Below, in pieces: positions 15-31,600 of a DNA stretch of 64,000 bases (position 1 is the first letter of the stretch; every line of letters starts with the position of its first letter). The notes under the pieces are model-generated. The model did not search any database. It saw only the letters and a list, made by a program, of their open reading frames with translations, and was not told where the DNA came from. The stretch is from NCBI GenBank assembly GCA_965637545.1, contig OZ281499.1:26040001-26104000 (forward strand), read 5' to 3'. Both the position numbers and the translations under genes were made by a program. Source of the stretch: Phallusia mammillata (taxonomy: Eukaryota).

Positions 15-2032
15 AACCTGCACGTCAGCATGTTGCAGTGACTCAGACAATTGTAACACCCGAACAGTGGTACAGATTGAAACCAGAATAAGATGTGGAA
101 CTGGAACTTTAACTGGTGGCGCGTTTCCTACAGCTACCACTTGTGCCGCTAACGAGCTCTGCGCAAGGACAGAAATAACAGGAGGTAAATAAGCCAAACT
201 TTGTTTAGCCAGCCTACATTTCCTTTAGACATTCTTCCGTTTCGCAAAAAAACTCCCATTAGGGACTTTTTACATGCAACTATGCCTAAAACTGACAACC
301 ACACACAACAAATTTTCGTCCTGTTTAACTTGTAACCAAATGAAGTTCTATATTGTAAAATACCAAAACTTATTTTCAGGTGCTACAGAAGGATCGTGCA
401 AGACACAAACTGGATGTAATTTGCTCTGCGCTGGAGTCACGTGAGTGAATTTTTCCACGTATATGAAAATTTCTGCAACTTGTAATAAAAGCTGACATAT
501 AGTTAGTTATTTTAACTTTCACATTTATCTGGCGTGCATCGTTTTGCTTAACAACCTGCCAGAGTGAAAACATTAAATGTTGGATATATTGCAGGGGTTG
601 CACATCTGCGTGTTGCAACGACGGAGATTTCTGCAACAGTCTTTCTGTTACGAACATAATAGATGTGGTCCGATGTGGAATTGCGCCTGTAACGAACGGA
701 GCATTCACTGCAACAATGGTTTGTGCATCTGGTCAAAAATGTCAAAGAACTGAAACAACTTCAGGTATAATCTGTTGCATAAAAATCTTTATCTTCATTC
801 ATTACATAATTAAAACTGGGTTTATTTTTCAGGCCAAACTGTTACACTTGTTGGTTCATGTATTGCTGGAGATGCCACATGTGGATCTGGATGTACTGCT
901 CCGTAAGTTTAAAAGCTCTAATGCTATCCAAATTGTTATCATGTCAACTTTAAATTGTCACAAAAAATTGAATCCAGCGTTCGTGACAACAAACAGTTAC
1001 AACTTGGAAGGAAACGGGTAGACAAAATCGCAAAGTCGACAGAATAAGGATATTTTGATTTGCAAACCGTAACATACTGATAGCCAATTAAAATTCGAAC
1101 TTTCTTAACTCGTTCCCTAGTAGGGAAAAGATCCAAACTTTATTTTAGTTTTTATGACTTAGCACTCAGATAAACACTTTTGTTTATTGGTTGCAGGGCT
1201 TGCGTGTCAGCTTGTTGCAACGACGCAGATGGATGTAACACTCTGTCAGTGGCAACACAAATGGCAAGACAATGTTACACTGGAACAACCACCCAAGTTG
1301 GAAGTGCAGCAGCAAATGGAAGTTTGACTGCTGAGCATTGCTCCGCTGGTGAAATGTGTGGAAGAAAACAAACCACAACTACAAATGGAGGTAGATTGCT
1401 GTCACAGTTACAATGCATCAACATCTAAAACTACAAACAACATCAATATACATAAACGCATTCAACCAACGAAGTCGTACATGTATTCGAAATACGCCAA
1501 GAATTTATGCCTGCAAACTGTACGCTTGTCATACAAAGCGTAAACATTACTTAACAACACACAAAATTACAATAGACATGGTGTTTAAGAAGACAATAAT
1601 ATATTTAATTTGTTTAGGTGAGACTACAGTGACAACAGTTGGATCTTGCAGCACAGCAGCTGAATGCAACGATGGAAACATGCTTTGCAATGGGTGAGTT
1701 GGTTATGCAAGCATTTGACCGTCTATTAATCGCCTAAACAAGATGTAGATGCCTATACTAAAAAAATACTCGATACCATGGCGTGCAACATTACAGCACG
1801 ATTATTAATATTGCAATAAGGTGAAAAAATCTTTTGCAGGGCTGCCGGTTGCATCGAATATTGCTGTGACACTGATGGTTGCAACTCTGCCGCTGTCACT
1901 ACAACAACCACAACCACCACTACTACAACCACTACAACAACTGCAACAACCACATCTGGTGCTAAACATGCAGCACAAATTAATATGTTGGTGATGATGG
2001 GTCTTGTGGTTCTCGGTTGGTTCATGGCCTAA
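15..2032 (+). CDS. Gene 1 (5' end outside window): multi-LU/three-finger-domain GPI-anchored-type protein; last 3 full domains, Thr stalk and GPI-type tail
   Basis: GT-AG exons 15-184, 380-440, 595-764, 833-902, 1197-1390, 1618-1693 and 1840-2032 join in frame. Repeated CxxACCxxxxxCN motifs; C-terminus ...TTTSGAKHAAQINMLVMMGLVVLGWFMA*. Confidence 0.85.
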
Positions 2033-3266: not shown

Positions 3267-6200
3267 ATGCATTATGCTGGAGCAATGACCGTTTTTTGCG
3301 TCCTTCTGTGCGGTGTTGCAAATTGTTTGAATTGTCGCATAGGAACAATGATGCAGAATGGATCAAATCCCACAATTGGATCGTTTGTATCTGCGACTTG
3401 CCCAGTCAACAACCAATGCTCAAGAACTCAAACAACTGCGGGTATTTACAAATATATCGTTGCAATGCTGAGAACATACCATTCAACTTAAATGTATATT
3501 TAGACTTCTGCGCAACTTATGTTTTTAGGTACCGTCGTCACGACCGTGGCATCTTGTTCTACATTCTCTGCATGCGACAATCTTTGCCTTGGTGTAACGT
3601 AAGTTTGTAGCCAACAAAGACTCGTGTAAAATCACCGAAGTAAAACTTTTTACTTGTATTTGCAGAGGTTGTGTTGCTGCTTGCTGCAAGAACGCAGACA
3701 ACTGCAACGGTGATCCGGTGGCGACTATGATTGGACTTGTCGATTGCGTTACTGACTACACGACTACTCCCGTGACCAGCATAACATGTAGAGATGGGGT
3801 TATGTGCGGAAGAAAAGAAGTTACTTCAGGTACAATTGTCAATTTACAAATTAACATAAGACGATGGTTTAATTCCAACATTTGCTAAACCTCAAGGCGG
3901 AACTACGACACCTACGGGCTCTTGCTCAACTGCGACAGAATGTGCTGCTCTGTGTACTGGCCAAACTAGGTAACTACAGCAGTATCTCGTAATAATTTTA
4001 AACCCGCGTACTTAACGAACCTTAAACCCCATTTACGCTCAATGTTTCAGTACAATATCTGTTTGGATAAATCACCAAAAATAGCATACTCGATATCGAT
4101 ATATTATTTTTACGAATTGACATGTTTTTGCGCATAGCTGCGTCTCAGCATGCTGCAACAACGCAGATGATTGTAACAGCCAGACCCAGGTTCAAATGAA
4201 CGTTGTGTCATGTTCCGTTACGAATAGTGGCTCAGCACCTTCAACACCATGTTCCGCAAATGAAGTTTGTGCTAAAAAAGAAGTTACATCTGGAGGTAGG
4301 TGAAGGAAGCAGAACTAAGTATGGAGCACGTTCAAAAAACATAAAATTACGAAACTAAATGTACAAAAACAAAACTAAATGAGTCAATTTTTACACAGGG
4401 TCGACTACAACCACAGCCTCGTGCCAGGCTCAAACTGCATGCGCTGGACTATGTACTGGTGAAACGTAAGTCAACATGAACCTTTACAACCGACTTGGAG
4501 GCTTAATACAATATTTCGCTTTTTTGAAGCGGCACATGCGTATCAGCTTGTTGCTCAAACGCTGACGATTGCAATTCGGGAACCGTTGCTCAGATTACGG
4601 CAGCAAACGCGCTGAGAGTTTGTATGGTGGGAACTTTTACAAAAGATGGATCCAACCGTGCTTCCGGAGTGCTGACGTTTACAACTTGCACGGCTAACCA
4701 GATTTGCGGAAGGACCGAAATGACAGGTGAGCAAGTGTCAACCTGATGGTGTATTACAATTTTTTGACTGCACTTTTATAATGAAAGAAACATTTTATTA
4801 AGTTTGCCTAATCTTTTAAATATGTTTTGTGCCGACTAAAAAGTGCCATTACAGTTGTGAATCTCTTAAATGTGCACTTTAAAAAAGTCATATTTTCAAC
4901 CCCCGCATTAGCAAAAAATAAATAAACGTTATAATGCAAAATATTTCAAAAAAAAGTCAATTGGTGATGTTTTTTAGAGGGTAGAGTTGTGACAACAGTT
5001 GGATCATGTCAAGATTCTGTCGCCACTTGTGACGCTCTTTGTGCAGGCACCGCGTAAGTTATAAAATTTGCAATGCTGACGCGTTTCCATCCGACTCAAA
5101 CATAAAAATTTCAACAACAATTCGAAACTTTTCATTAAGGTAAACTTTGTCAATACCTTTTTTAAAGGCAAAAACATTTTCCGAAGTTTAGTTGCCAAGC
5201 CAAAAACACATATGCGACTGATCAAAGATTTCATGATCAGTGAATTGAACTTTTAAAGTTTGTCAGTTTAATTTAGGGATTTTAACATCTATTTTATATT
5301 ATTCAGCAACTGTGTGTCAGCCTGTTGCAATAACGAAGATAACTGCAACAGAGAGTCTGTGGCTAACATCAAAGCAACAATTGCGTGTGGAACTGGAACA
5401 ATGGCTAATGGAGCGTTTCCTTCAACCACCACTTGCACCGCCAACCAGCTTTGCGCGAGGACCGAAATTGGCACAGGTAAAACTTTAAAACCGTCCTGAT
5501 AAAAAGTGAATAAAAATTTACAAATAAGTTGTTATGTTGCAAATTTTTATCGATTACAATAAAAAAAAATGCCAGTGTTGGTAACATACCCATTACATAT
5601 TCAAACGAACAAATAAACCGCTTTACATTAGTAGCTTTAGAAACTGTAATGACAAATTTGTCTGCAGCTGTAAAGGGATCGTGCCAGACACAAAATTCAT
5701 GCAATCTACTCTGTACTGGAATCGCGTAAGTTAACTTTTTTACATTTACTGACATAAAAGTGTTGCATGGAAAGCATTAAACAAAACAACACGAAAATTG
5801 ATTTAGTGGCGGTCATTGTTGCTTCACATAAAAGAGAAAGGCCACATCTGTCATAGTAGGTGACACGCACTTCGACACTGGCAAAAACTTGTGAGAATCA
5901 AATGAATTATTTAGCAAGTAACAAACAGCGCAGTATTCACGTCTTATCGGCAGGTACACTAATCAGTTGACACAAACACAAACTTATTAATAGGACTAAG
6001 TTTTCACTTATTAAGTTAAGTGATTTGTCTGCTATCTAAGCTATAATGAAGGTTAAATATAAGCTTTCAAGATCATTATTACCCATCACAGGGGTTGTAC
6101 ATCAGCATGTTGTAATGATGCCGATAACTGCAACACTCGGACTGTGGCACAAATAAAAATGGTTGTTCGATGTGGAACTGGGTCTGCAACAGATGGAAAC

Positions 6201-7713
6201 CTCCCTAACACAATGACTTGTGCATCTGGTCAACAATGCCAAAGAACTGAAACTACTGCAGGTATCAAGCATTTCATTGAATAGGCGGTTTTCATTCATT
6301 ACATAATTAACATTTGGACTATTGTTTCAGGTAACACTGTTACAACTGTTGGAACGTGCATTGCAGGAGATGCCACGTGTGGAACAGGATGTGCTGCAGC
6401 GTAAGTCAAAAATCCTATGCTCAAACTATTGTGGTCGTCATTTTAAATACAAATGGTTTACACACAAAAAAAACAGTGTGCTTATAAATTTTTCTTGTTT
6501 TATTGCAGGGATTGCGTGTCAGCTTGTTGCAACGACGCAGATGGATGTAACACTCTGTCAGTGGCAACACAAACAGCAAGACAATGCTACACTGGAACAA
6601 CCACCCAAGTTGGAAGTGCAGCAGCAACTGGAAGTTTGACTCTTGAGCATTGCATGGCTGGTGAAATGTGTGGAAGAAAACAAACCACAACTACAAATGC
6701 AGGTAGATGGCTGCTACAGTTACAATGTACCTACATCTAAAACTAAACCAACCGCAACATATTTTATAAACACAAACACACATTTAACACCCAATGTTGA
6801 ACTTCAATGATGTTCAAGAGGTTTAAAGTTAATGTAAAAGCATATAGAGCCAATAAATGATAAGCTGCAGACAGTGCACACTGTTTCGACCTATAAGGTC
6901 TCATCAGTGCAGCTGGTGACGAGAGATCGGCCGCATTGGCTAGTGTAGCCATTCAACGGCACTCCAGTTTGTTGGGAGCACAGGGTACAACCCCATGGCC
7001 ATTGTGAGCCAGTTTCATCTGTGCTGTATGTCCAGTTGTGGCATCGCACAGACTAGGTGATGCATGGGGTTGTACCCTGTGCTCCCAACAAACTGGAGTG
7101 CCGTTGAATGGCTACACTAGCCAATGCGGCCGATCTCTCGTCACCAGCTGCACTGATGAGACCTTATAGGTCGAAACAGTGTGCACTGTCTGCAGTTTAA
7201 AGTTAATCATGTATTTCCTCCTGCAAACCGTACGCAAACACTAATAAGACAAGCTAAGCATAATCATCTCATAACAACGTAATGAATCGCAACAAACATC
7301 AGGTGTATATCATTTGTATATCATGACAACAACACAACATTACATGTGTTTAGGTCAGACCACAGTGGTAACAGTGGGATCTTGCACCACAGCAGCTCAA
7401 TGCAACAATGGAAACATGCTTTGCAATGGGTGAGTTTGTTATGCACGCAAATGACCGCTTATTAATCGCTAATACTAAAACAAACGCTCGATACGATAGC
7501 GTACAACACAATTAGTGTTATTAAAAGATGACAAATTTTTTCTGATGCAGGGTTGCAGGTTGCATCGAACATTGCTGTGACAGTGACGGTTGCAACTCTG
7601 CCACTGTCACCACCACAACAACTCTTGCAACTACATCCGGTGCAGAGCATGCAACCAAAATTAATATGTTGATGATGATGGGTCTTGTGGTTCTCGGTTG
7701 GTTTATGGCTTAA
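3267..7713 (+). CDS. Gene 2: signal peptide, 7 LU-like domains, short Thr stalk, GPI-type tail (626 aa, 15 exons)
   Basis: Exons 3267-3441, 3529-3598, 3666-3829, 3897-3969, 4138-4295, 4399-4465, 4530-4726, 4978-5053, 5307-5476, 5668-5725, 6092-6261, 6331-6400, 6509-6702, 7354-7429, 7551-7713. Total 1881 nt, in frame. Begins MHYAGAMTVFCVLLCGVANC. Confidence 0.88.
6834..7195. mobile_element. Hammerhead-bearing inverted-repeat insertion (Penelope-like pLTR or retrozyme fragment) in intron 13 of gene 2
   Basis: Perfect 133-bp arms at 6865-6997 and 7063-7195 with a 65-bp spacer. A 13-bp direct repeat GTTTAAAGTTAAT flanks it (6821-6833, 7195-7207). It is absent from the homologous intron of gene 1. 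The Penelope link is inferred from the known association of hammerheads with PLE pLTRs. Confidence 0.7.
6863..6914 (-). ncRNA. Type I hammerhead ribozyme (antisense copy in the left arm)
   Basis: Exact reverse complement of 7148-7195. On this strand stem I extends to 7 Watson-Crick pairs (AGCTGCA/TGCAGCT). Confidence 0.85.
7146..7197 (+). ncRNA. Type I hammerhead ribozyme (sense to gene 2 pre-mRNA)
   Basis: Stem I CTGCA (7148-52) pairs with TGCAG (7191-95); core CTGATGA 7153-59; stem II GACC-ttata-GGTC; GAAA 7173-76; stem III CAGT-gtgc-ACTG; GTC triplet 7188-90 with predicted cleavage after C7190. Confidence 0.88.
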
Positions 7714-11535: not shown

Positions 11536-14500
11536 ATGGGCCAAGTACGTACAGTTGCACTGTTCACGGTTTTCTTTGTATGTCGCATTTCGTTCAGTGA
11601 TGCTCAGCCTGCGACCTGTATGGTTGGTACGGTTGGTGATGGTATAGCTGCAGCTACCTGTACTACGTTTTGTGGGAGGACGGAAATAGCGGGCGGTGGT
11701 AAGTAGAAGCTTGTAAAGAGCATTTCTCGCTTGTATAAGCAATTTAATGGGTGTGCTATGCACCAAATGTAATTATATGATATAAGACCGCCTTCCACAG
11801 AAAAATAACACCGGACGCATAGAGCAGCTCCAAATCGTTTGGTAGCTTTACACTAAATGTTTTGGCAGGAAAACACTTCATTTAACATCCAAAGACTCCC
11901 ACACAACCTTTATTTATTATGCCCCCTTTGCCCAATGACCGCACGTTTTGCAACCTATGATTTATAACGCAACTTGTTTAAAAAGTGGAGAGTAAAACAA
12001 ATCCGTCCTAAAGGATGTTTAAAACGGTCAAAGGGAAACAGCTCATGAAACACAGAGCCAAAACAGTTCACATCGGACGTGTCCTCTTTTAACGACTACT
12101 GTTTTTTTTTTCAGCCCAAGTTGGATCCTGTGAGGCCGATGTCGCCGCTTGTGACGCTCTGTGTGCTGGAACAGCGTAAGTTGATGTAAAAAAGAACTTT
12201 AAAAAAATTGTTCTCACCGACATTATAAAATACGTCAAGTAAACGCGCACAGAGTACGCTAGCTTGTTTCACAACCGCGCCGTCGCACTAAAACAACATA
12301 TCTGACAAAAAGCAGTTATAGCAAGTGAAATTTGCATTTAAGTTAAATCAAACAAACCAAAATAAAAGTTTTTTAGAAATTTCTGTAACGTTTAGAAACT
12401 GTGTATCGGCCTGCTGCAATGATGCTGACGATTGCAACACCGGGGTCACTGCAATGAGAGGAACAGTGACATGTGGGGTTGGTACACATGATGGTAGCGC
12501 GTTCCCTTCCCCTGCAATGGTGTGTGACCCAGGCGATCTGTGTGGAAGGATTGAAACGTCAGGCACACGTAAGGAAAAGATTCACATGTTTTAACAACGG
12601 TACAGCTCTTTTGGGTGTTCTTTCCGCCTATACCCATCTTGCAGACCTACATTAGGTCTGGCGCCCTGTAATTTGCAATAAAATTGTTTTTTATTAATTT
12701 GGCATTACCGGTATACGCCGCATATACCGACAAACCCTGTCGAGTTGACACACTGTGTACAATACTTAGTAAGAAATTTTAATCCAAAAAAAGAATCTAG
12801 TAGTAACGAAAAGGGGAGTTGTGCACTTAAATGAGTCAGAATAACACAGGTCACATTAATTCGACATTTTCTTTTTACAGCCCCAACTATTGTCGGATCT
12901 TGTTCAACTGTTGCAGAATGTGAAACTCTATGCGATGCAGTGACGTAAGTTTTACTGTACAAAAGTTTGAGAAAGCCAATAAACATTCAAACCAGTATTT
13001 TGGTTTTTGTATGGTTCACATAAAGATAAATTTAGAGATCTAACAACCAAATTACTAAAAACCAAACTCGCCAAAGAAAACTAATATTATTATCAAAACT
13101 AAACAGAAACTTGTGCCACGACATCATGTAAATATCACCAGACATTTTCTTTAGGCATTCTATCAGAAACTGTGTGACGACGTTTGGCAAAAAAAGCTGC
13201 CTACCTTTCAAAAAAATCATCATTTCACCTAAAACCTTAGTGAACAACTGCCAATTACTGAACATATTGATATATAACAAACAATATACAAAGTAATATG
13301 GTCACAGGGATCCATGTGTATCGGCATGTTGCAATGATGCTGATGACTGCAATACTCGAACAGTGGAAGAAATGAGCAACATTGTGCGATGTGGATCTGG
13401 GGAGTTGGCAAGTGGAGTATTTCCTACAATGCTGACTTGTGCTGCAGGATCACTTTGTGGACGAACAGAAATTACCGGTGGTAAGAAACGATTTGCATGA
13501 ACTAAAATGGCAACAAGAAATAGTTGCGCTTTTCATAAAATGTTTTTGCAGGTGCTACCACCGGAACTTGTTCAACGCAAGCCCAGTGCGAAGCGCTTTG
13601 TGACAATACCGCGTAAGTTTTATGAAGCAGAATGCTTCATAATGTTTTTTTGCAAAGCGGACATTATGCGAAAAGTTGTAGGATGACGTTAGTTGAACAT
13701 CCGTTCCTTTCCCAGAAACTGTGTATCGGCATGTTGCGATGATGCTGACGACTGTAACACACGAACAGTGGCAGAAATGAGCAACATTGTGCGATGTGGA
13801 ACTGAAGCGGACGCTACTACAACACTGTTGACTTGCGCGGCTGGATCGCTTTGTGGAAGAATGGAAGTAACTGCTCCAAGTAAGAAAATATTTAATTTTC
13901 CTTACATTTTTTTTTAATTGTACCAGTAGTTAATAACCATAAATGCTTTTTTAACAACTGACATTAAGAACGCTAGTGCAGAAAATGTGTTTCTAATGTA
14001 AAAATATCAAAGGGTGAAATAAACTGGCACTGATAAAATGTTTTCATGAAGTTTTTGTTTTTTGAAGTATTTGAGGGTGCATATACTTTCTGTAAAGCTT
14101 TATCAAGCATTCGTCCTAATTTGTTTTAGTTTGAATAATTTTACCTACCTTAACCGATGTTTAAGTCAAACTTTTATGTTTTTGGTTAAAGGTGCAGCAA
14201 CTACAGGATCTTGTTCGACCCAAGCAGAATGCGACGACTTATGTAAAAATACTGCGTAAGTACAAAAAAACAATTTGGTATCTTGAGCTGATTCCGGCTT
14301 TCTACGGCTAAATCAAACGACAGAAAACATCACTACAAAATAATGTTCCAGTAATAACAGAAAGCATTAATGCAATGTACTGTTCTAGTCAATACAAAAT
14401 GTTTTCTGATTTAATAATGCGCTGCTTATGAGCAATACTTGAATGCAGTGACGCCAAACCCACTTTGTTTAAAAAAGCAAAATATCGGTAAACCCAACAG

Positions 14501-17500
14501 CTACATAATTTACGCGATCTGTTCATACAACTTCGGAACTACGAAAATTTAAAAACGCTAGGAAACCATACTTTGTAGAAAGGTGTTTCTGACGTCGCGA
14601 CAAAACGAAATTTTCACGAAATAAACTCATTGAGAATCGAAAATGATTTGACGAGAAACAGCCAGTTAAATACGTAACTTAAACATTACAATAAGTATTT
14701 CTGATTTCACAACTTCACAACCGCGTTGCATCTTCATTTTTGTTGAAGGTTTCTAGTGAAAATTCTCACGGATTATTTTCTGTAATTTGACTTTTTCCAG
14801 GTCTTGCACTTCAGCATGTTGCAGTGACGCGGATATGTGTAACACAAGAGCAGTGGCAGAAATTGGCGCAACTATTAAATGTGGAACTGGAACTTGGGCT
14901 AACAATGCATTTCCTACTGCCACCACTTGTGCCGCTGGCGAACTTTGCGCAAGAATGGAAGTCAGTGGAGGTAAAAGTTCGTTTTTGTAGTTGTTTTGCA
15001 AAAACAAATTAGCCGATTTGGTTAGCACACTTCCTATAGTTATACAAGATTTTGGTTAGTTATGTTGACTGAGCTTTGTCCGACTTAATTCGAATACAAA
15101 ATATGTGTAGGTGGTGACACAGTGGGTTCCTGCCAGACACAAGCTGCATGTGATTTGCTATGTTCTGGAGTAACGTAAGTGTTTGTCAAAACTGTGTTCT
15201 GTTTCAGCTATTTTTCAGTGCAGCTAATGTATGTATGCTCCGATACAACACGTTGTACAACACGAAGTCTCATAACTTATTTCACTCGTGTTACAGAAAC
15301 TGCATGTCTGCGTGTTGCAACGATGCAGATTTCTGCAACACAGAAGCAGTCACAGATATCGTCGCAGTCGTCCGGTGCGGGTTTGGGACAGCCGACAGTA
15401 ACGGAGCCTTCACTACAATCATGACATGTGACACAGATGAACACTGTCGCAGGACTGAAACAACCTCAACGAATACGATTGCGGGATCCTGCATTGCTGA
15501 CGCTTCCATGTGCGCTAGTGGTTGCACCGCAACGTACGTTGCTTCATGAATAAATCTGATACTCATGTACACTTGTCATTAAACTTTTTTCTATCAAGCC
15601 AAAACCCTTTTCCCGGGTGTTATAACACAAGCATAATACCCTCGATTAAAAAAACTGTTAAAAAAACGATTCAATTTGGCACAAGTTTAAATAAACTCAA
15701 ACGAATCCAAAGTCAAACCAGATACTTCGGTTCATTTTGTGCCGGCAAACCATTAAATTTGTTTTCGTCACAGAGATTGTGTTGCTGCGTGTTGCAATGA
15801 CGCAGACTTGTGCAACACTTTGACCATTGCTGTGACGACAGGCAGAGTTTGCATGGTTGGAACAACTACCACAGTTGGAACTAATGATCCAACTGGAAGT
15901 ATAGTGCCCACACATTGCAGTCCAAACACCTTCTGCGGGAGAACTGAAACCACCACAACAGCAAGTAACAACTTTTGGAAATATTTATGGCTGCATACCC
16001 AGACACATACTTAATGTGAAGTAATATTACAGATAATGTGGATACTGTGGTGAGGGTTGGATCATGCCAGGCTGATGCCACTGCTTGTGATCTACTCTGC
16101 ACTGGTGTCACGTAAGTTGGACGTTAAAAATAGATAAACAGATGACAAAACACTTAAAAAGCAAAAACCTCGTTTTTTTATAAATTGTTTTACATTGCTG
16201 TAGCATTCTGTATTTTTTGGCTATTGCTTAGATGTAAACGTCAATGTAAAATAATATATATTTCATTGTACTCCAGGGGTTGTGTGGCAGCATGTTGCAA
16301 TGATGCCGACAACTGTAACAGCGAAACAGTCACTGTTATCAAGAACGTAGTGACCTGTGGAGTGGGAGTTTTTGCTAGTGGAGCGTTTCCAACCCCAGCT
16401 ATGACATGCCAAGCTACAGAACGATGTGGGAGAACAGAATTAACAAGTGGAGGTAAAATTTGACATGTATTATTAAAACATTTTAGGTTAACTACACATC
16501 GCACTTTCACATTTACAATCAACCTTACATACATTTTTGCTTCAAAATTTGGTAAGTATTTTTGTATTATCTTCAAGGATTCTTTTGTTTTGGGATTAAT
16601 CTATGCCGCCAAATTGGAAAATTTAGGTTAAAGTAAAATAAAACCGCGGTTCACTGATCTAATCATTAACAAATCAACACAAATATTATATTACCCAACT
16701 TAATAGTGATACACTTCTGTTTTTGGTGCCCATTTAGTTATTTTCACTACCGCTTTTGAACTGATTTCGGACAGCCATTTAATGGTATTCTGGCCTACTT
16801 TTCAAATGCCCATGTGTAAAGTAATACCTAATTCTAACATTGTAATTTGTTTTTTCATAAAGAGAACGTAAAGTTTATACATATATCTACGATTAAAAAA
16901 AGTTTAAAAAGTCTGACGTAAATCTTGTTCATTACAGCTGTTGAAGGATTTTGTTCAACGACAACTCAATGCACAGCTGGACTTTGTGGAGAAACCTCGT
17001 AAGTTTCACTTTTCTCTCAATGATTTATACCTAGCATAATGCGCAACACACGTCAATATGCAAATCAAATAAAAACTAAATTTAATCCAAAACTTAGTAT
17101 TGTCGCAACTGAGGTAAATGTTAACCAATGACCCATAATGTGTGTTGCAGAGGTTGTGTGGCAGCTTGTTGCAACGTGGCAGATGGATGTAATAGTCTAT
17201 CAGTGGCAACACAAATGACAAGACAGTGTTTGGTTGGAAGAACTATGCAAGTTGGAAGTGCTGCAGCAACTGGAAGTCTGACTGCTATGCATTGCCCGGC
17301 TGGCGAAATGTGTGGAAGAACACAAACCACAACTACAACTGGAGGTAGGTAGCTGTAACAGTTGCATTGCATCAACAGTTAAAACTACAATCGGGTTTAT
17401 TTTCGCGTGGAACAGGCGTGTACGCAAATCAGGAAACCTAAGCAAAACATTTTAATCTAAAGTGAAGCAGGTTATAAGAAGTACAACTCGGAAAAGTTTT

Positions 17501-18050
17501 TATCAACGATTTCCTATTTTTGTCAACATACAACCTACTAACACAAAGCAGTCGACCTAAGCTTAATCGTAAATTGTAAAAAAATGATTTGGAGCAGAAA
17601 ACCCTACTGAGTACAAATTCACACCTGTTTAGGTGAGACCACAGTGGTAATAGATGGAACCTGCAGCACAGCAGCTGAGTGCAACGATGGAAACATGCTT
17701 TGCGATGGGTGAGTTGATTAAACAAATCTACTCATTGGTGACTGCCAAAAAAATGTACTTAACATTCAACTTTGTATCTTTCTAATTCATGGCGAAAAAA
17801 AAAACAACTTTTAAAAAAGTTAATGCAGATAGACTAAAGAAATATGTTTTACAGGGCTGAAGGTTGCATCGAATATTGCTGTGACACTGACGGTTGCAAC
17901 TCTGCCGCTGTCACTACAACAACCACAACCACCACCACTACAACCACAACAACAACAGCAACAACAACTACAGCTGGTGCTGAACATGCAGCACAAATTA
18001 ATATGTTGGTGATGATGGGTCTTGTGGTTCTCGGTTGGTTTATGGCTTAA
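11536..18050 (+). CDS. Gene 3: signal peptide, 9 LU-like domains, Thr stalk, GPI-type tail (788 aa, 18 exons)
   Basis: Exons 11536-11698, 12115-12175, 12396-12568, 12881-12944, 13308-13480, 13552-13612, 13716-13879, 14192-14255, 14801-14970, 15111-15174, 15297-15533, 15774-15964, 16033-16111, 16277-16452, 16938-16998, 17151-17344, 17633-17708, 17855-18050. Total 2367 nt, in frame. Confidence 0.88.
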
Positions 18051-21239: not shown

Positions 21240-24200
21240 ATGACTCGGGAACGTGCGGTGGTGTTGTTAGCAGCTCTGGTTATTTTCGGAGTTTCCCAAA
21301 CCGATGGTTTGAGCTGTCAACAGGGATCAAGTGCTGCCGACGATCTGGCGAATAGCAATTGCGCTGGCGCCGAAACGTTTTGTGGAAAAACCGAAACAAC
21401 GGACAACAGTAAGCAAAAATGTTTTATTAATTACATTTTTAATCAAATTAAACGCGTGTTAAAATAAATTTTAAGTAATGATAGTTTGTAAGTTGTTGAC
21501 TTGCTACGTTAGCTTGACATTTACTCTCAATAAACTACGGCTTTAAAAATATTTTTTCTTGTCACACCTTCCATTAACAAGTTTGTTCACCCTACGAATT
21601 TTAGACGATGATATAACATATGTAGGTCGCTAAACACCTACATGGATTCTTGTTAAAATATTTGTATCACCCCAGTAAGTAGCTTTTTCCGATTACCAGC
21701 ACGGATTTAAAAATTTTTGTTCCGAATTACAGTGGGAATGACAGCTACTGTCGCATCATGCCAAGCTGACGCCGCAGCATGCGATGGCCTATGCATGGGA
21801 ACTGCGTAAGTAAAAACTTGCCTATTTCCTAAATTGCACTAATGTATTTTTTTATTACTATACTTGAAAAATATATGTTTTGATCAAAACGAAACAAAGT
21901 TTTAAAATGTCGTGCCAAAAAGTCATGCCTGAAAGGTTTGTTTCAGTGGCTGTGTATCGGCATGCTGCAACGTAGATAACTGCAACACTGCGACTGTTGC
22001 CGAGATAAGAAATGTGGTAACTTGCATGACGGGGACAGTAACGGGTATGACACTTACCGCTACCACTGCTTGTGAGGCTGGACAGCTTTGTGGGAGAAAA
22101 CAAACAACTGCTGCCGTTGGTGGAGGTGAGAAGCAGATCGCAACATAGAACATAAAATGGAAATGGTGCAACATTTCGCTATAATCATTTTTACACAAAC
22201 GAGACATAATTTTTTACGACACAATGCGACAATCTTACAAGCGTTTCTACCGAACGCTGTGTTCAGCAATTATGCGTCAGGACTTAAACATGCTGCACGT
22301 AAGCATGAGTGTTAGTAAAAGCCTGAATGCTTTTGTAATAAACTGTTCGATCCGATAACATAAGATTAATTGAGAACACCTAAACATTTCGTGTGACAAA
22401 AACACTTTTTTTTCAGCTGTAACAACTGTTGGGTCGTGCTCCACACAAGCACAGTGTGATTTGCTCTGCAGTGGTGTCACGTAAGTAATCAGTTTTATTT
22501 CGTGTCAAAAACATTTCATGAGTCAAATACACGAGCCTTAAACAACAAACTGGTTTACAGAGATCCGTGTATATCGGCATGTTGTAACGATGCGGACAAC
22601 TGCAATGGGGAAGTTATTGCCGATGTAAACGGCATTTTACGATGTGGAACTGGTTCAACTACCGATGGAAATCTTCCTGCCTACATGACTTGTGCCACCA
22701 CACAAGAGTGCGGGAGAATCGAAACTTCGGTCACCACGAACGGTGAATTCAAAAGATCAAATAAACTCAGTAGCAAAAATGCTGACTTGTTCATGAGAAA
22801 AAATTAAGACATGTAAGGTACCTGCAGGTATCAAGGCCCCTTAAAAAACTATTGCGTATAACTAAAAAACAATTGGAGAGTTTCAGGTCAAATTTGGTGT
22901 GATGGTTGCAGAGGTTGATATTAAACATCTATCAGATTTTGAGGATGTTTGCAAGTTTTGTTTTTGTAGGATGACAGTTTAAAAAAAATTAAAACTTGGG
23001 CCTTATTACATGCGTATGCTGTTAATAAAGCCCAACATTTTCATGTTTTTAAAAATAGTCCAGAAACCAATCGGACTCAATTAAACTTTGCTTCTGTCAA
23101 AATAAAGTTCAAACAAGCAACGCCATTAACTTATACAACACATATATTGTTAACTAAGGCATATAACTGTTAATCTGAAGGTACTAACAACTAGGAATAA
23201 ACGACCTTTTGACAGTCGATAACCAAAAAAACTAAATGAAAGATTACTTCTACAAACATCTTATTCGGACTTTTTGTCTCCCTAAGAAAGCAAAAAAGCA
23301 AATTTTGTGCATATCAGTCGCCTTTACTATAAAAGACACTTTAGAAAATGACAAAAAAATGTTGGGCCTTATTGCAAGCAATGGCTGACAAACAAAACCG
23401 TAATCAAATTTATTTGAAGTAATTCTTATTTCCAGATGGGACAATGCTTCAATTAAACTGAAATGACCCCATTACTAATATATCTTAAAAATTTTTCATT
23501 TTGACAACACAACCTTTCCATTTTTGTTACCAATTTTTATGAAAAAATTTATAAAAAGTTGAAAACAAACACGTCTAAATTTGGATTGGTCACAACAACT
23601 ATTACACACAACTTGCAGGTCCAAAACTTTGTAAATCATTGTAAGTACGTATATATTTTAAAATTACATCAAAACGGAAATATTTTTTCTTGCACACAAA
23701 AAAATATGAGCAGTGGGCCTTATTACCTTCCGGGCCTATATACCTTCAGGTACCTTATTAAAAATGTCCAATACATTTTTCAGGAAACACTGTGGTGACA
23801 ACCGTGGGATCTTGTGCAGCAACAGCTGATTGTGGGAGTCTGTGCAACAGCGCTGCGTAAGTTTTAGATTTAACACACATTAACATTCTATCCACTGGCG
23901 GTTTCTATATTTGCAGATATTTGCAGTATTTTAACTGAGGTAAAATAAACGCTGTTTACATAACAATTGCGCAACAATTATTTTTACACTGCAATCAAAG
24001 CAGTTTAGTCGGTTTGCTTTCAAATATCACAAACTTACTTGAACTAAGCTCTCCGCAGATCTCTGACCGTAAAGCGTAAAAGCGCAGAAAATAAACAGTC
24101 AACGAAACGCAAAGTAGTTGAATTGAAAAGCATTTCGAATCTTTTTTATGCTTTCCATGTACAAAGTTTAAGCTCAGCAACATAAAAATCAGCAATAATA

Positions 24201-27200
24201 CCAATAAATACCATGCCTTCAATTAGTACACAAAATATGACTAAAATACATTTTTAGAGGATGTGTGGAAGCTTGCTGTAACGACGCTGACAACTGCAAC
24301 ACTTTGACCATCGCTGTACAGACAGGTATAAAGTGTATGGTTGGAACAACTACCACAGTTGGAACCGATCCAGCAACTGGAAGTATGGTGCCCACACATT
24401 GCAGTCCAAATACCTTCTGCGGGAGAACTGAAACCACCACAACAGCAAGTAAGATCCAACATATCTACATAACGTTGCCTTTGAACATTAAAAATTGAAC
24501 AACAAAGATACCACATGACTTGTTTTTTCAGACACTGTCGACACTGTAGTTGTTGTTGGTTCATGTCAAGCTACGGTCACCTCTTGTGAACTACTTTGTG
24601 TTGGTGTTGCGTAAGTAGAATACCACTACTTTAGTCTAGCGACGATGCAAAAAAAATATTCCCTAGTGCAAAACTTTGCCATAAAGTTGTACTTGTTAGT
24701 CATGTTAAAACAAGCAAACTCTAAACATGGTTCTCAAAAAGCAAAATCAAACAAATTAAAACAACGGATAAGCACGCATTATACGCCCACTAAAAGTACA
24801 TGTCAGTTAAAACCACACCAAAAATGTATTACATCCGTAATTTGCATTAGAATAAGGAAAAAAACTAGACAAATATATTTTTGCAAGGTTTCTGCTTTCC
24901 TAAATATGTTTGTTTTATTCACACGGAAAGCAAAATAATACATGTCATATGGTGTTACAGGGGTTGCATGGCAGCATGTTGCAATGATGTCGACAACTGT
25001 AACAGCGAAATAGTCACTGATATAAAGGACGTAGTGAGATGTGGAGATGGTACTCTATCAACGGAAGGAGTATTTCCACGCCCAGCTATGGCATGCTTAT
25101 CTACACAACAATGCGGAAGAACAGAAACAACCACAAGCGGTAATTCAAATTTAGGCTTTATTGCGCGGTTTTAAAAGTTAACTCTTTGGAATAGTAGGTT
25201 TTTTACTTCATACATGTATAGGTAACACTGTGGTTGTGGGATCGTGCACAGCAGCAAGTGCCTGTGCCGGACTCTGCGGCAGCAATGAGTGAGTAACCTT
25301 TACAATCGCAGTTGCATGCTTAAGTACTTGTATAGCCAATCTCACCAAAACAGTTGAGACAGATCCCCCGGAAAACCCCGGCGAAATCATTGCACACAAG
25401 TCTGTATATCACAACAAACAATAACACCAAACACACCTTCAAACGTACGGTCGTAATAGTTACTAATGTTTGTCATGTTTTTGTAGAAATTGTGTTTCTG
25501 CTTGCTGTAACAATGCCGACACATGCAACACTCTAACCGTAGCCATGCAGAACAGTCCAATTTGTATGGTTGGAACAACTACAACAGTTGGAAACAACGC
25601 TGCAACTGGAAGTTTGATGGCCACACATTGTAGTCCCAATATGTTCTGTGGAAGAACTGAAACCACAACAACAGCAGGTGAAAACCATCGGTTTGATGTT
25701 GAAACTATTCGTCTGAACTTTTAACTAAACCACCATTTTGCAGACAACGTGGACACAGTGGTTGTTGTTGGATCATGTCAAGCTTCAGCAGACTCATGCG
25801 ACTTGCTCTGTGCAGATGACTCGTAAGTTTATGAGCTGACACGCTACAAAAATCAACATGATCAATAATGCACAATTTGCAGAAACTGCGTCCGCGCATG
25901 CTGCAACAATGCTGACGGTTGCAACAGTGTCACGGTTGCTATGATGACAAGCACGCTGACTTGTTACGATCAAGCAGTTACAGGAATAGCGACAGCTTTA
26001 ACCACAACAGCTGACTGCACCACCGATCAAGTTTGTGCCAGAACAGAAACCGGAACTGGAAGTAAGTCCTGTTGCTGGGGGTTGCTACTGCGTTCTGTAT
26101 AACTTAGATTTGAATTACATTGAAACTTATTGTAAATTGAAATGGTAACGGTAACTAGTTTTCATTCGGCAGTGAGAATCGCGCACTTTAAACAATCGAT
26201 CTGCATTATTTGTTGTTGAATAAATCAATTTCAACAACACAACTGACAAACGGCTTCCCGTGCGCACAAAAAATACGCGATTTTACTGCCGAACAAAAAT
26301 TTACACCAAAGCAAAGATTCTTTTAACACAATAATGTTCGAACAGATACAGCAGATGTTGTTACATCTTGTCAAGCTGCAACTGCATGTGCAACATTGTG
26401 TGGCTCAACTCAGTAAGTACTCAACTGTGTCACAATTTCTATAACTGCCTGAAACCAGTAACAGTCTCTTGAAGCGCCGTGCACAATACGTCCTAAAAGC
26501 TTGAATCATAGTTTTAGTTTTTGAACCAATGGACTTTGGGTTTTAGGGAACTCCTGATTGGGAAGCAGTGACCCAAATTAATAGCTATCAGCAAACCAGT
26601 TTATTGTATTTCATCAGCCTGTGAGATCAAAACAAAGGTTACAATAGACAAGGGTTAATTTTATTTGTGTGTGTTTTTTATTTGTCCATTTTCTTTGCAG
26701 AAATTGTGTGAGTGCTTGCTGCAGCAGTTCGGATCTCTGCAACAGTTTAACAGTGAGCCAACAAACAGCCCGAAACTGTTACGTTGGAAGTTCAACTTCA
26801 GACACACCAGTTATGGATATGACTTACACTCGGTGCGCTGCATCTGAACAGTGCGGAAGAACTCAAACATCAGTCACATCTGGAAGTAAGTCTTGTGCGA
26901 AGTTACCTAATGCTCGGCTCTTATTTGTACTTTCGTGCGGCCAACCCCAAAGTAAGGTACTGATGAAATGACATTTACTCAATGTTCGGGATTGAATGAA
27001 TCAACCGAGCACATTTACCTTGCAGGTTTTTTTCTAATGCTTTGCTAATCTTCAGGTACAACAACAGTGACTACAGTTGGATCTTGTACAGCAGCAACTG
27101 CATGCGACACTCTCTGTGGAACGTAAGTTGTGAAAACTTAATCATAAAATGTTGTAACTGTCTCACATTTCAAGCAAACATTTGCCCGTAACGTGTATAC

Positions 27201-27518
27201 AAATTAATTCATACTAACTTCGTCCCATCAAGGGTAATAATAACATCATTTCTTTTAACATGCATCTAACATGCTTTTAGAAAAGAAGCAAAACGAACAA
27301 ACGGCTAAACATGATTATCTTATTTTCATAGAGCGGCAAACTGTGTATCAACTTGCTGTGACACTGATGGTTGCAACTCTGCCGCTATTGCCACAACAAC
27401 AACCACTACTACAACCACTGCAGCAGCCACAACAACTACAGCTGGTGCTGAACATGCAGCACAAATTAATATGTTGGTTATGATGGGTCTTGTGGTTCTC
27501 GGTTGGTTCATGGCTTAA
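21240..27518 (+). CDS. Gene 4: signal peptide, 8 LU-like domains, Thr stalk, GPI-type tail (736 aa, 17 exons)
   Basis: Exons 21240-21408, 21733-21805, 21947-22125, 22417-22480, 22561-22742, 23784-23856, 24258-24448, 24532-24610, 24961-25139, 25222-25288, 25487-25677, 25744-25822, 25883-26061, 26346-26412, 26701-26885, 27056-27122, 27332-27518. Total 2211 nt, in frame. Confidence 0.88.
22814..23757. mobile_element. Non-autonomous DNA transposon (MITE-like, TA-flanked) in intron 5 of gene 4
   Basis: Termini TAAGGTACCTGCAGGTATCAAGGCCC and GGGCCTATATACCTTCAGGTACCTTA are ~26-bp inverted repeats with 3 mismatches. Internal GGGCCTTATT repeats; no transposase ORF. Confidence 0.6.
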
Positions 27519-28320: not shown

Positions 28321-28382
28321 GGACGGGACGCTAACGTTGAGTGAATATAAGGTTGGGATCGTATGGTTTTACATCAGTTGAG
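28321..28382 (+). promoter_or_regulatory. Orphan TATA+Inr cassette variant
   Basis: GTGAATATAAGG (T at 28346) and TCAGTT (A at 28376). Also present at 48078/48108 and 58592/58622. Confidence 0.5.
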
Positions 28383-28642: not shown

Positions 28643-31600
28643 AGAAAATCTTACAAGTCGTGGTAGAAACGTTTTCGCATCAAGTAAATTCAGCTTAGAT
28701 TGCGTAACAAAGTTATAAACGCGATTTCGCCAAAAAAAATTTGTCTGTTAATATAAGTGTTGTAAGTGTTTGATATAAGCTGTGTCTGTTAATAGAGAGG
28801 TGTTATGATACGTTTAAACCGATTCTGTACATTCCAAAACCGTTGGATTGTAAAAACGCTAAATATAACTTTTATAAACAATTGCCAGGTGTCATAAAAA
28901 CAACAAAGGAATTTGAAAACCTTTAAACAAACTTAAGTTGATACTCTGGTGGTTGCAACATTTGGAAAGAATGAAGTAATGTCTCTCTAGTAACAAAAAA
29001 TAAAGTTTTTTATTGGTCAAAAAATGCCTTCTAAATTTCACTTATTTAACAAAGATATAGTCAACCACACTACACTTCCTCTTTCGTTGCCCAAAATCAG
29101 TCAGGACACAAAAAAGTAAAAACGGCGGATTTAGTCTTGCGTGAAATACTGACACGAAACCCCTTTTTTGCGTCTCATGGCGGATACCAGTTCCACGTGT
29201 TGTTGATTAAATTCTAATGCCGACTCAACATTCACAGCAGAAGCAAAACTGACTACCGCTGAATTAACAACAACATCGAGCTCCACATTTACTGTTTAAA
29301 AGTGTTGCTGTTTCATACATTTTTTAATGCACATTAATCATATATGCTTGTCGCCGGTGAATATAGCAAGCAATAAATGATTGGTAGAAAAAGTCGAGTA
29401 TCGTCTGTAGCCAAAAGACTGCAGTGAATGATTGGTTAATTAAGATGAATGTGAACAGAAGCGCAATACCAGTCACGACAAAAACACGAGAAATACGCCG
29501 ATCCTCACCGCACACGACGAGTCAACACGTGGAAGCGTCAACCTTTGGAAAATTTCTAATGGAGCTGTGCGAGAGAAAAAGTTTTGGGGTAATCAGACTC
29601 CCTTGAAAGAGTCGGGACGCTACAATGTAGTGAATATAAGGAGGGGCCGCCACGTTTTTGTGCAGTTGAGTTGAGTTTACGGTGAAGTGGGAAGAGAAAG
29701 AAAATCGAGAGTAGTGCGCTTTGGTTTTCGGGCAAAAAGAGAAAGATTTGGCGCAAATCAGTGCCTAATTGTCCGGGACTGGTTGGAATTGTGATCAAAG
29801 GCCCTACACAACTTTGTTTTTTGTGTGCTCGCCTCAGAGCTATGAAAAAGCAATAATAAAAAAGTTTTACACACAATCAACCACAACTTTAGTTTTCAGA
29901 CGCGCAAAAATATTGTTACAACATGTTGTCGGAATGTGAAAAAACGATATTGTTTTAAAAATCATGATAGTAAACGCCATTTTAGTTATGACATAGTATG
30001 AAGGATTGTGGGGTACCGTTTCAAATTTGGGTTTGCAAGTGGCCGAATCAGTTTGGCAAACCGGATACATATCTAGCTTGTACTTAATTCGTTCAATGAG
30101 TTGTTCAAGTAGTCATCGTATATGTGTTAAAAATTTAGTGGTAAGATCATAACTTAATGCCAACAATTTATCCGATCGAACATGTTCGTACAGATATAGT
30201 TGGGATTTGTTTTAACCAATATTATCTTAAATTTAAACGATGGGTCAAGTACGTGCAGCCGCACTGTTGGCTGTTTTTCTTGTGTGTTGCGTTTTTTACA
30301 CCAATGCAGCGGTTACGATGTGCTTGGTTGGTACGGTTGGTAGTGATATCGCAACAGCTGCCTGTACAAACTTCTGCGGAAGAACTGAAATAGTGAGTGG
30401 GGGTAAGTAGCAATTTTGTTAAGAATATAATTTGTTTGTTTGTTTTTGTGATAAGCGACGCACAATGTTTAACAGGGTGTCAAAATTAAAATGGAAAAAC
30501 AAGGTAGAGAATGCAAAAACACACAGCGTCAGAACCGCTTACATTGCACATTGTACTACATTGTAACCGCTTACATTGTATTTGTACCTAGTTATTTACT
30601 TTTGTACATTTCAGAGCATGTTGGATCGTGTGAGGACGATCTCGCCGCTTGTGACGCTCTCTGTGCCGGGTCACTGTGAGTTGATGCAAATAAAATAAAC
30701 AGCATGTTTTACACACCAAAAAGTTTAACGTGGATAAAAAATTTGCACTAGTTTCAATTGACGCCGTTTAAGCATACTTAACGCAACCAAGCACTACAAT
30801 AAATGTTAGCGATAGAAAACAATACCAAGTTATTTTTTTAATATTATTAGTTCATTAATTACTTCAAGAACAACGTTCGTAAATGTGCATGCGACGCAAA
30901 ACAATTTACCTTTATTTTTAGGAACTGTATATCTGCTTGCTGCAATGATGCTAACGACTGCAACTCAGCCGTAGCTACAATGAGAGGGACAGTAAATTGC
31001 GGTGTTGGAACACACGATGGTACAAACTTTCAAACAGCTGAAAAGACATGCGACGCAGGCGATCTGTGTGGAAGGAAGGAAGTAACTGACTCTAGCAATA
31101 GTAAGTCGAGAAAATGAACTTTTATGCTTTTTGCACGCGGATAGACATTAAAATGTTACAGTGGTTTTAGACCACAAATATTTTGTACAACACGCTTCTG
31201 GAAAACTTCTACCAACATTCCTTATTACAGCTTTGACCTTTTGCCAGGGAATCTTGACGGTTAACTTGACTAAACACGTATAAACCATATTACAAAAGCA
31301 TAGTATTTTTGTACCGGTCATGAATATTTTTGTGTTTACTAACAACTTCAAAAATACCAAACTATTAAACAGAAAAAAACGCAAGAATTTAGAAATACAA
31401 ACAAAACTACAAAACTTTTCAGTCGTAACCATCACTGGATCTTGTTCAACTGTGGCTGAATGTGAAGCACTCTGCGATGGCGAAACGTAAGTTGTGTTAG
31501 TCCGAGACATTTCTGGCCCTTTTCGAACAAATGTTACAATTAAAATGTCCCCTGAGTTCCAGCAAAAGTGTAGAATTTAAAATAAATTTGCAGTATTTTT

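What the first reader, a model, noticed from the sequence alone, without database searches (positions are those of the whole stretch)
3267..7713. Exon module is out of register with the domain, so any pair-skip or intronic crossover makes an intact hybrid domain
Seen: in all genes, long exons (155-197 nt, phase 2 to 1) carry the end of domain n (C..CC..CN) plus the first three Cys of domain n+1. Short exons (55-82 nt, phase 1 to 2) carry the middle three Cys. No intron lies at a domain boundary. Neither exon is frame-symmetric alone, but any adjacent pair is. Inference: skipping or swapping pairs always restores 10 Cys while joining halves of different domains. This is a built-in combinatorial route at the RNA level (splicing) or the DNA level (unequal crossover).
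Basis: partly seen in the sequence, partly recalled or inferred. Interest (0 to 1): 0.8.

Follow-up and report, generated by a model that had tools for sequence, protein, structure and literature searches.

The report
Offset exon pairs in three-finger genes
Eight neighbouring genes encode surface proteins built from 7-9 three-finger (Ly6/uPAR-like) domains, and their repeating exon pair is shifted by about a third of a domain, a real but explainable gene architecture with no sign yet that the animal uses it to make hybrid proteins on purpose.

Summary
I rebuilt all eight genes. Every model is an intact GT-AG reading frame. The 46 internal long exons are 155-197 nt (phase 2 to 1) and the 53 short exons are 55-82 nt (phase 1 to 2). 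None of the 105 introns lies at a domain boundary, and all 53 complete domains have 10 Cys.

A predicted structure of one domain matches only three-finger/LU structures (CD59, Prod1, GPIHBP1, uPAR), but no sequence profile recognises it.

265 of 266 even-numbered exon skips keep the frame and 10 Cys per domain, while 0 of 73 single-exon skips do.

- **DNA level:** at least two exon-pair gains or losses separate the paralogs. Sub-domain mosaicism is strong (G6 switches partner inside exon 5; G1 exon 7 carries an exon-confined patch, p about 1e-16).
- **Against intronic crossover:** non-equivalent introns share no similarity (0 of 732 pairs). The mapped exchange edges lie in exons or at exon edges, so these exchanges are frame-neutral whatever the intron phases.
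- **RNA level:** transcript contigs show only ordinary splicing.

The most likely origin is an internal duplication of a three-exon single-LU gene, followed by pair-wise amplification. Other notes of this scan on the same window already record the mosaic and the intron loss. None records the exon register.

The parts
3267..3441 (+). G1 exon 1: signal peptide plus C1-C3 of domain 1, ends in phase 1
3529..3598 (+). G1 exon 2, short (70 nt, phase 1 to 2), C4-C6 of domain 1
3666..3829 (+). G1 exon 3, long (164 nt, phase 2 to 1), C7-C10 of domain 1 plus C1-C3 of domain 2
3897..3969 (+). G1 exon 4, short (73 nt)
4138..4295 (+). G1 exon 5, long (158 nt)
4399..4465 (+). G1 exon 6, short (67 nt)
4530..4726 (+). 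G1 exon 7, long (197 nt). It is 92% identical to G5 exon 7 although the flanking introns are unalignable: an exon-confined exchange patch.
4978..5053 (+). G1 exon 8, short (76 nt; the acceptor at 4987 is also in phase)
5307..5476 (+). G1 exon 9, long (170 nt). The collinear match to G5/G6 ends at about position 118-120 of the exon.
5668..5725 (+). G1 exon 10, short (58 nt)
6092..6261 (+). G1 exon 11, long (170 nt)
6331..6400 (+). G1 exon 12, short (70 nt)
6509..6702 (+). G1 exon 13, long (194 nt), 94% identical to G0 exon 5
7354..7429 (+). G1 exon 14, short (76 nt), last-domain type
7551..7713 (+). G1 exon 15, terminal: C7-C10 of domain 7, Thr-rich stalk, hydrophobic GPI-signal-like tail, stop
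15..2032 (+). G0, 3' part of a paralog (7 exons in the window), same exon rule
11536..18050 (+). G2, 9 domains, 18 exons, one fused long+short exon at 15297-15533
21240..27518 (+). G3, 8 domains, 17 exons (the donor of exon 1 is uncertain)
30240..36435 (+). G4, 8 domains, 17 exons
41173..47161 (+). G5, 8 domains, 17 exons; the copy best represented in RNA-type contigs
51958..57763 (+). G6, 8 domains, 17 exons; G1-like in exons 1-4 and G5-like from exon 5 on
61207..64000 (+). G7, 5' part of a paralog, 98-100% identical to G4

Best explanation
The window holds a tandem array of lineage-specific genes. Each encodes a signal peptide, 7-9 three-finger (LU-fold) domains, a Thr-rich stalk and a GPI-signal-like tail.

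The repeated coding unit is an exon pair, not a domain. It consists of a long exon (end of domain n, the linker and the first finger of domain n+1; phase 2 to 1) and a short exon (the middle three Cys; phase 1 to 2).

The phase-1 intron sits at the tip of loop 2, which is the position of the canonical intron inside LU domains. The phase-2 intron is specific to this family. The canonical phase-1 introns between signal peptide and domain, and between domains, are absent.

The most likely history (inferred):
1. A single-domain ancestor had three coding exons: signal peptide + C1-C3, then C4-C6, then C7-C10 + tail.
2. An internal tandem duplication with break points inside the first and last exons created the fused 'C7-C10 + C1-C3' exon.
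3. The long+short pair was then amplified, whole genes were duplicated in tandem, and patchy gene conversion between equivalent modules of paralogs followed.

The frame rule (pairs are symmetric, single exons are not) is a by-product of this history. It acts as a filter: only pair-wise gains, losses or skips give a product. It is not a dedicated diversity device.
For: - **Gene models and phases:**
- **First and last exons are the two halves of a long exon:** exon 1 is signal peptide + C1-C3 and the terminal exon is C7-C10 + tail. The residues right after CN are alike in linkers and tails (S/T-x-x-V).
- **Fold:** AF2 model with pLDDT 78.5. Nearly all Foldseek matches and VIA-align ranks 1-38 are three-finger/LU-superfamily structures (CD59 Z 7.2, Prod1 7.1, GPIHBP1, Lynx1, uPAR, CD177, TGF-beta receptor ectodomains).
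- **Intron 1 position:** it falls between residues 42 and 43 of the model, the hairpin tip between strands 33-40 and 43-50. PMC6600238 states that the intron inside LU domains lies at the tip of loop 2, and that LU exon sets are flanked by phase-1 introns even in multi-LU genes.
- **Pair-wise copy-number differences:**
- **Exchange seeded in exons:**
- **Ordinary splicing in transcript contigs:**
Against: - The duplication with exonic break points is inferred from anatomy only. No single-domain relative or outgroup locus was found. Loss of an ancestral inter-domain intron before amplification would give the same picture.
- The LU assignment rests on a model built from a 5-sequence alignment and on fold matches of middling Z (about 7). 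Pfam and PDB sequence profiles give nothing.
- Contigs cannot show rare isoforms, so regulated pair skipping is untested rather than excluded.
- One exchange edge (G2/G4) does lie in an intron, about 16 nt before the short exon.
Confidence: 0.68

Rival explanations
1. One reading: the offset is used as a combinatorial device, and regulated skipping of exon pairs (or splicing between neighbouring genes) produces many hybrid-domain isoforms.
For: Every pair skip is frame-safe and restores 10 Cys (265 of 266), while single skips are frame-breaking and would be discarded. The genes lie head to tail on one strand, 3-5 kb apart.
Against: All joints seen in RNA-type contigs fit constitutive introns. 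The 'skips' of 716 and 354 nt carry unaligned contig sequence between them and come from a paralog's transcript laid on G1. About 0.24 of G5's words are in RNA-type runs, close to my estimate of about 0.27 for a full mRNA. No reads were available, only contigs, so this is weak negative evidence.
Confidence: 0.06
2. One reading: unequal crossover within introns is the main ongoing process that reshuffles pairs and makes hybrid domains, and the architecture is kept because it allows this.
For: At least two pair-number differences exist among paralogs, with all domains intact. The G2/G4 high-identity tract begins in the last ~16 nt of an intron, so G2 domain 5 and G4 domain 4 share their middle and end (97%, 86%) but not their first finger (65%).
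Against: 0 of 732 within-gene intron pairs show similarity, and the longest shared exact runs are 15 nt or less. Non-equivalent exons share mostly 8-12 nt runs, so present-day homologous unequal crossover inside a gene is unlikely. The pair duplications are old (76% identity, introns unalignable). Other exchange edges lie in exons. Among related pairs, pieces of one domain co-vary more (rho 0.72-0.85) than the two domain parts of one long exon (0.49).
Confidence: 0.17
3. Exchange runs through spliced RNA: reverse-transcribed paralog transcripts recombine with the genes. This would explain exon-confined patches and the precise intron loss.
For: G2 has a precise intron loss that fuses a long and a short exon. 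The G1/G5 exon 7 patch stops within a few nucleotides of both exon ends while the introns are unrelated.
Against: The G0/G1, G0/G2 and G0/G4 tracts around the long exon run 43-46 nt into the downstream intron, which a cDNA template cannot give. Only one intron of 105 has been lost. Diverged introns would stop ordinary DNA conversion at exon edges just as well.
Confidence: 0.07
4. The pattern is an artefact of hand-built gene models, or the genes are dead.
For: Several short exons have alternative in-phase acceptors, and the donor of G3 exon 1 is uncertain. Decayed module remnants exist between genes.
Against: All 8 models give intact frames with GT-AG at every junction. Transcript contigs confirm several junctions. 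All 53 complete domains keep 10 Cys.
Confidence: 0.02

Closest known systems
Multi-LU GPI-anchored proteins (uPAR/PLAUR, C4.4A/LYPD3, CD177, zebrafish two-LU cluster, Drosophila multi-LU proteins)
   Same: Signal peptide, tandem three-finger domains ending in CCxxxxCN, a GPI-signal-like tail, genes in tandem clusters, and an intron at the tip of loop 2 (PMC6600238).
   Different: In the known genes each LU domain keeps its own two-exon set flanked by phase-1 introns, and the signal peptide has its own exon (PMC6600238, PMC4839075). Here there is no intron between signal peptide and domain or between domains, and an extra phase-2 intron splits the second half. The loop-1 disulfide pair is missing and an extra Cys pair sits in a shortened third finger (inferred from spacing). 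No sequence profile recognises the domain.
Repeat genes whose exons are out of register with the repeats (nebulin; Jagged-1 EGF exons 5-6)
   Same: The exon pattern repeats with the domain pattern, but all exon borders lie inside domains. Duplication of an exon block then copies shifted units (PMC1553488; PMC2725086 abstract).
   Different: Nebulin repeats are short helical modules without disulfides. Here the unit is a disulfide-rich globular fold, so a shifted exchange must rebuild a 10-Cys core.
Patchy gene conversion among tandem paralogs (as in primate opsin or MHC genes; from general knowledge)
   Same: High-identity tracts with sharp edges between neighbouring copies, and exon-confined patches next to diverged introns.
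   Different: Nothing essential. Here every tract edge except one at the middle of a long exon falls inside a domain.

Membership tests
Ly6/uPAR (LU, three-finger) domain superfamily | Three-finger beta fold with a disulfide core | tested here: met
   AF2 model of G1 domain 5, pLDDT 78.5. Nearly all Foldseek matches and VIA-align ranks 1-38 are three-finger/LU-superfamily structures, best CD59 Z 7.2, rmsd 2.6 over 66 residues. The Z is middling, but the list is exclusive.
Ly6/uPAR (LU, three-finger) domain superfamily | C-terminal CCxxxxCN signature and 8-10 Cys at consensus spacing | tested here: met
   All 53 domains end in C-x3-CC-x4/5-C-N and have 10 Cys. By spacing, the loop-1 pair is absent and one extra pair sits in finger 3 (inferred).
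Ly6/uPAR (LU, three-finger) domain superfamily | Recognised by the curated sequence profile (Pfam UPAR_LY6 and relatives) | tested here: not met
   No Pfam family at E up to 10 for the first 252 aa. A profile of 5 domains finds no PDB chain at E up to 10. It finds no true relative among 1.84 billion representatives: the two hits are Cys-free bacterial repeat proteins.
Ly6/uPAR (LU, three-finger) domain superfamily | Canonical gene structure: a signal-peptide exon plus a two-exon set per domain, flanked by phase-1 introns, with the inner intron at the tip of loop 2 | tested here: not met
   The inner intron position is met: phase 1, at the hairpin tip between residues 42 and 43. The flanking introns are absent in all 8 genes, and an extra phase-2 intron is present.
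GPI-anchored surface protein | Cleavable C-terminal GPI signal (small omega residues, spacer, hydrophobic end) | not testable with these tools
   The tails end in a small-residue stretch followed by about 20 hydrophobic residues. No predictor was available; this is inferred.
Mobile protein module for exon shuffling (symmetric 1-1 exon set) | The domain is bounded by introns of the same phase | tested here: not met
   No intron lies at any domain boundary. The symmetric unit is the shifted exon pair.
Programmed combinatorial splicing locus | Several alternative isoforms that use different exon subsets | tested here: inconclusive
   Only contigs could be laid. They show constitutive junctions, and word shares fit a near-complete G5 mRNA. 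Rare isoforms cannot be seen this way.

The most novel reading that the evidence does not exclude
The offset exon pair is functionally exploited. In expressing tissue, regulated skipping of exon pairs, or splicing across neighbouring genes of the array, yields a repertoire of surface proteins with hybrid three-finger domains. Single-exon errors would be removed automatically because they break the frame.
Probability: 0.06. Interest if true: 0.8.

Novelty: new variant of a known kind. Interest (0 to 1): 0.36.

Why it matters
This is a clear natural example of a disulfide-rich globular domain whose repeating coding unit is shifted against the fold. Every intron lies inside a domain, and only pair-wise changes are tolerated. 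That contrasts with the textbook LU gene, in which each domain has its own exon set flanked by phase-1 introns.

It therefore shows another route by which a multi-domain gene can grow: a duplication with break points in exons, followed by amplification of the fused unit.

It also offers a test bed for how far three-finger domains tolerate chimeric assembly. The paralogs already carry domains whose three parts were last homogenised with different partners.

The family itself is undescribed and has no detectable sequence relatives, so its function is open. The architecture alone does not show a diversity-generating system.

Tried and rejected
- **Pfam on the first 252 aa:** nothing.
- **Word-indexed protein search with the full 626 aa:** nothing.
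- **ESM Atlas look-alikes of the fused exon:** best score 0.78, unnamed clusters, no lead.
- **HMMER profile against 1.84 billion representatives:** two hits, both bacterial Thr/Val-rich repeat proteins without the Cys pattern. I rejected them as composition-driven.
- **PDB sequence profile:** nothing.
- **First structure job:** I dropped those rows and did not resend them.
- **Fold search in the 'atlas' library:** failed twice because the remote machine did not answer.
- **AU tests of nine alternative clades on the three domain pieces:** none rejected (p 0.085-0.63). The 43-150 nt pieces have too little signal, so I rest the mosaic claim on identity steps and site patterns that include introns.
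- **Correlation test of which pieces share history:** it did not favour the exon as the coherent unit.
- **Rfam on the intron palindrome:** only sub-threshold hammerhead matches.
- **Other species:** the exon register could not be compared, because no relatives were found and the genome collections on hand are prokaryotic.
- **Organism:** earlier notes call the genome a sea squirt. I did not verify that.
Full report
**What is there**

The window is a head-to-tail array of eight paralogous genes on the + strand:
- G0, up to 2032 (partial)
- G1, 3267-7713 (the finding)
- G2, 11536-18050
- G3, 21240-27518
- G4, 30240-36435
- G5, 41173-47161
- G6, 51958-57763
- G7, from 61207 (partial)

I built every model by hand-guided search for in-phase GT and AG sites around the conserved Cys motifs. 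All eight give intact reading frames with GT-AG at every junction. G1 has 15 exons, a 1881-nt CDS and 626 aa. The proteins consist of a signal peptide, 7 (G1), 8 (G3-G6) or 9 (G2) domains, a Thr-rich stalk and a hydrophobic C-terminal tail.

**Check of the observation**

- The 46 internal long exons are 155-197 nt and all have length mod 3 = 2 (phase 2 to 1).
- The 53 short exons are 55-82 nt and all have length mod 3 = 1 (phase 1 to 2).
- Long exons carry C7-C10 (C-x3-CC-x4/5-C-N), a linker of about ten residues and C1-C3 of the next domain. Short exons carry C4-C6.
- Exon 1 is signal peptide + C1-C3. The terminal exon is C7-C10 + tail.
- None of the 105 introns lies at a domain boundary.
- All 53 complete domains have 10 Cys.

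The one exception is G2 15297-15533, where a long and a short exon are fused by a precise intron loss.

Contigs of RNA-type runs of the same organism lie on exons only. They reproduce intron 7430-7550 exactly and the introns after 4726, 5053 and 6702 approximately. Most of these contigs are 90-95% like G1 and so come from paralogs. The 1449-1572-nt contig fits G5.

**What the domain is**

Sequence methods are blind to it:
- No Pfam family at E up to 10.
- No hit in the word-indexed protein search.
- No PDB chain by profile.
- In a full HMMER pass over 1.84 billion representatives, only two Cys-free bacterial repeat proteins, which I reject as composition artefacts.

A structure prediction of G1 domain 5 with a five-domain alignment gave pLDDT 78.5. 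Both fold searches returned almost only three-finger/LU-superfamily structures: CD59 (Z 7.2, rmsd 2.6 over 66 residues), Prod1, irditoxin, GPIHBP1, SLURP-2, Lynx1, uPAR, CD177, TEX101, C4.4A and the TGF-beta/activin receptor ectodomains. These fill ranks 1-38 of the search that does not lean on Foldseek.

**Where the introns sit in the fold**

In the model the phase-1 intron falls between residues 42 and 43. That is the hairpin tip between strands 33-40 and 43-50, i.e. the tip of the second finger.

The review PMC6600238 states three relevant things:
- LU genes typically have a signal-peptide exon plus a two-exon set flanked by phase-1 introns.
- Multi-LU genes keep this set for each added domain.

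PMC4839075 gives the same three-exon picture.

So the family keeps the canonical inner intron. It lacks the canonical flanking introns, both between signal peptide and domain and between domains. It has an extra phase-2 intron between C6 and C7, in a shortened third finger. That combination is what puts the exon module out of register.

**Most likely origin (inferred)**

Exon 1 and the terminal exon are exactly the two halves of a long exon. The residues right after CN are also alike in the internal linkers and in the tails (S/T-x-x-V).

The simplest history has three steps:
1. A three-exon single-domain gene existed.
2. An internal tandem duplication with break points in its first and last exons fused 'C7-C10' to 'C1-C3'.
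3. The long+short pair was then amplified.

Loss of a boundary intron before amplification would look the same. I found no outgroup to decide between the two.

**Test of the inference in silico**

Removing any even number of adjacent internal exons from the five complete standard genes keeps the frame and leaves 10 Cys in each domain in 265 of 266 cases. Removing one exon never does, in 0 of 73 cases.

A similar, weaker property holds for canonical LU genes. There the intron at the tip of loop 2 also lies inside the domain, so a crossover in it would join halves of two domains. This assumes it shares the phase of the flanking introns, which I recall for PLAUR but did not check. The difference here is that every intron is inside a domain, and that single-exon errors break the frame.

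**DNA-level evidence: pair-number changes**

- G4/G7 exon 5 aligns to both G2 exon 5 and G2 exon 7, and G2 exons 5/6 resemble exons 7/8 (76% for the long exons). G2 therefore carries one extra long+short pair.
- G0 and G1 go from a G2-exon-9-to-11-like block straight to a G2-exon-16-to-18-like block, so they lack two pairs. By collinearity, G0 domain 2 and G1 domain 6 combine a first and middle part of one position with an end part of another.

**DNA-level evidence: mosaic histories**

- *G1/G5/G6.* Informative sites group G1+G6 in exons 1-4 (102 sites against 61 and 21). They group G5+G6 from exon 5 on (127 against 18 and 22), with Fisher p about 2e-20. Introns 5-8 are 94-98% identical between G5 and G6. 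The switch lies within the first ~20 nt of exon 5, between C7 and the CC pair, and intron 4 is unalignable.
- *Exon 7 patch.* Inside the G5/G6 block, exon 7 alone groups G1+G5 (21 sites against 9 and 5; against its flanks p about 2e-16). The alignment shows the patch confined to the exon, while the introns on both sides are G5=G6 and unrelated to G1.
- *G2/G4.* The high-identity tract begins about 16 nt before a short exon. G2 domain 5 and G4 domain 4 therefore share the middle and end (97%, 86%) but not the first finger (65%).

**Why this does not make the offset a built-in device**

1. Within genes, 0 of 732 intron pairs show any similarity against 79 of 838 exon pairs. Shared exact runs are 15 nt or less in introns and mostly 8-12 nt in exons. 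Homologous unequal crossover between different positions of one gene has little to seed on today, and least of all in introns.
2. Most mapped edges are in exons or at exon ends. Such exchanges are homologous and in register, so they keep the frame whatever the intron phases. Diverged introns simply stop them.
3. The recent exchange is between equivalent positions of neighbouring paralogs. That is ordinary patchy gene conversion in a tandem family.
4. Among related domain pairs, the three pieces of one domain co-vary more (Spearman 0.72-0.85) than the two domain parts that share a long exon (0.49). This does not point to the exon as the preferred unit of inheritance.
5. Half-domain trees differ, but AU tests do not reject any of nine alternative groupings (p 0.085-0.63). 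The pieces are too short.

**RNA level**

The single reads call showed only constitutive junctions. The apparent long skips come from a paralog's contig, with unaligned sequence between the matched parts.

Four RNA-type runs of one study hold 0.23-0.25 of G5's sampled words. I estimate roughly 0.27 for a complete spliced mRNA (CDS 2154 of 5989 nt, less the words lost at 16 junctions). Other studies hold almost none, which suggests stage- or tissue-limited expression of a near-complete transcript.

Contigs cannot reveal rare isoforms, so pair skipping is untested, not excluded.

**Comparison with what is known**

Out-of-register exons are documented for other repeat proteins. In nebulin all exon borders lie inside the domains while the exon pattern repeats with the domain block (PMC1553488). 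Jagged-1 EGF exons are out of phase with the EGF boundaries (PMC2725086). Multi-LU proteins with many domains exist, up to 44 LU domains in Drosophila (PMC6600238). A 2026 survey of invertebrate LU proteins does not mention tunicates or exon structure. I found no description of an LU gene with this shifted exon set.

**Verdict**

The frame logic is true. Pair-wise gains and losses and sub-domain mosaicism are documented here. The claim of a combinatorial mechanism is unsupported, and partly contradicted for the intronic-crossover route. I class this as a new variant of a known kind (a multi-LU gene family with a shifted exon set), of moderate interest.

Noticed in passing
window 6860-7200 (inside G1 intron 13): A near-perfect palindrome with sub-threshold Hammerhead type I matches on both arms (6864-6913 on the minus strand at 22.8 bits, 7147-7196 on the plus strand at 21.4 bits; gathering score 34). 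It has by far the highest depth in RNA-type contigs, with many variant copies, so it is a transcribed repeat family.
   Followed up: partly
window 15297-15533 (G2): Precise loss of the phase-1 intron fuses a long and a short exon into one 237-nt exon. It is the only one of 105 introns lost in the array.
   Followed up: partly
window 2550-2710 and 8549-9108: Decayed module remnants lie in the spacers after G0 and G1. They are a long-exon fragment with in-frame stops and a lost Cys, and an intact-looking orphan short exon at 9045-9108. The two remnants are 92% alike over 152 nt. These are signs of gene death within the array.
   Followed up: partly
window 27399-33039 and 57647-64000: A recent segmental duplication at 98.5-99.4% identity starts inside the terminal exon of G3/G6. 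It runs through the spacer into G4/G7, to the end of the window.
   Followed up: no
window 36417-36935 and 38695-39214: A 520-nt direct repeat at 99.6% identity starts 19 nt before the G4 stop codon, and G4 has five extra C-terminal residues. The normal 3' flank of the family resumes at about 39217. This fits an LTR-type insertion at the end of the coding sequence.
   Followed up: no
window 11025-11399, 18920-19277, 29438-29791, 40050-40413, 50092-50451, 60404-60758: A block of about 360 nt in the spacers is conserved at 78-96% between copies, more than the neighbouring first exons and introns. It lies a few hundred nt upstream of the G2, G4, G5 and G7 start codons and further (about 1.5-2 kb) upstream of G3 and G6. 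It may be a shared regulatory element or a repeat.
   Followed up: no
window 43144-43340 and 53543-53730 (G5 and G6 exon 7): In a G5/G6 background of 94-98% identical introns, exon 7 is only 86% identical. G6 has a 9-nt deletion and a cluster of changes in the first-finger loop, so divergence is concentrated in the finger segment.
   Followed up: partly
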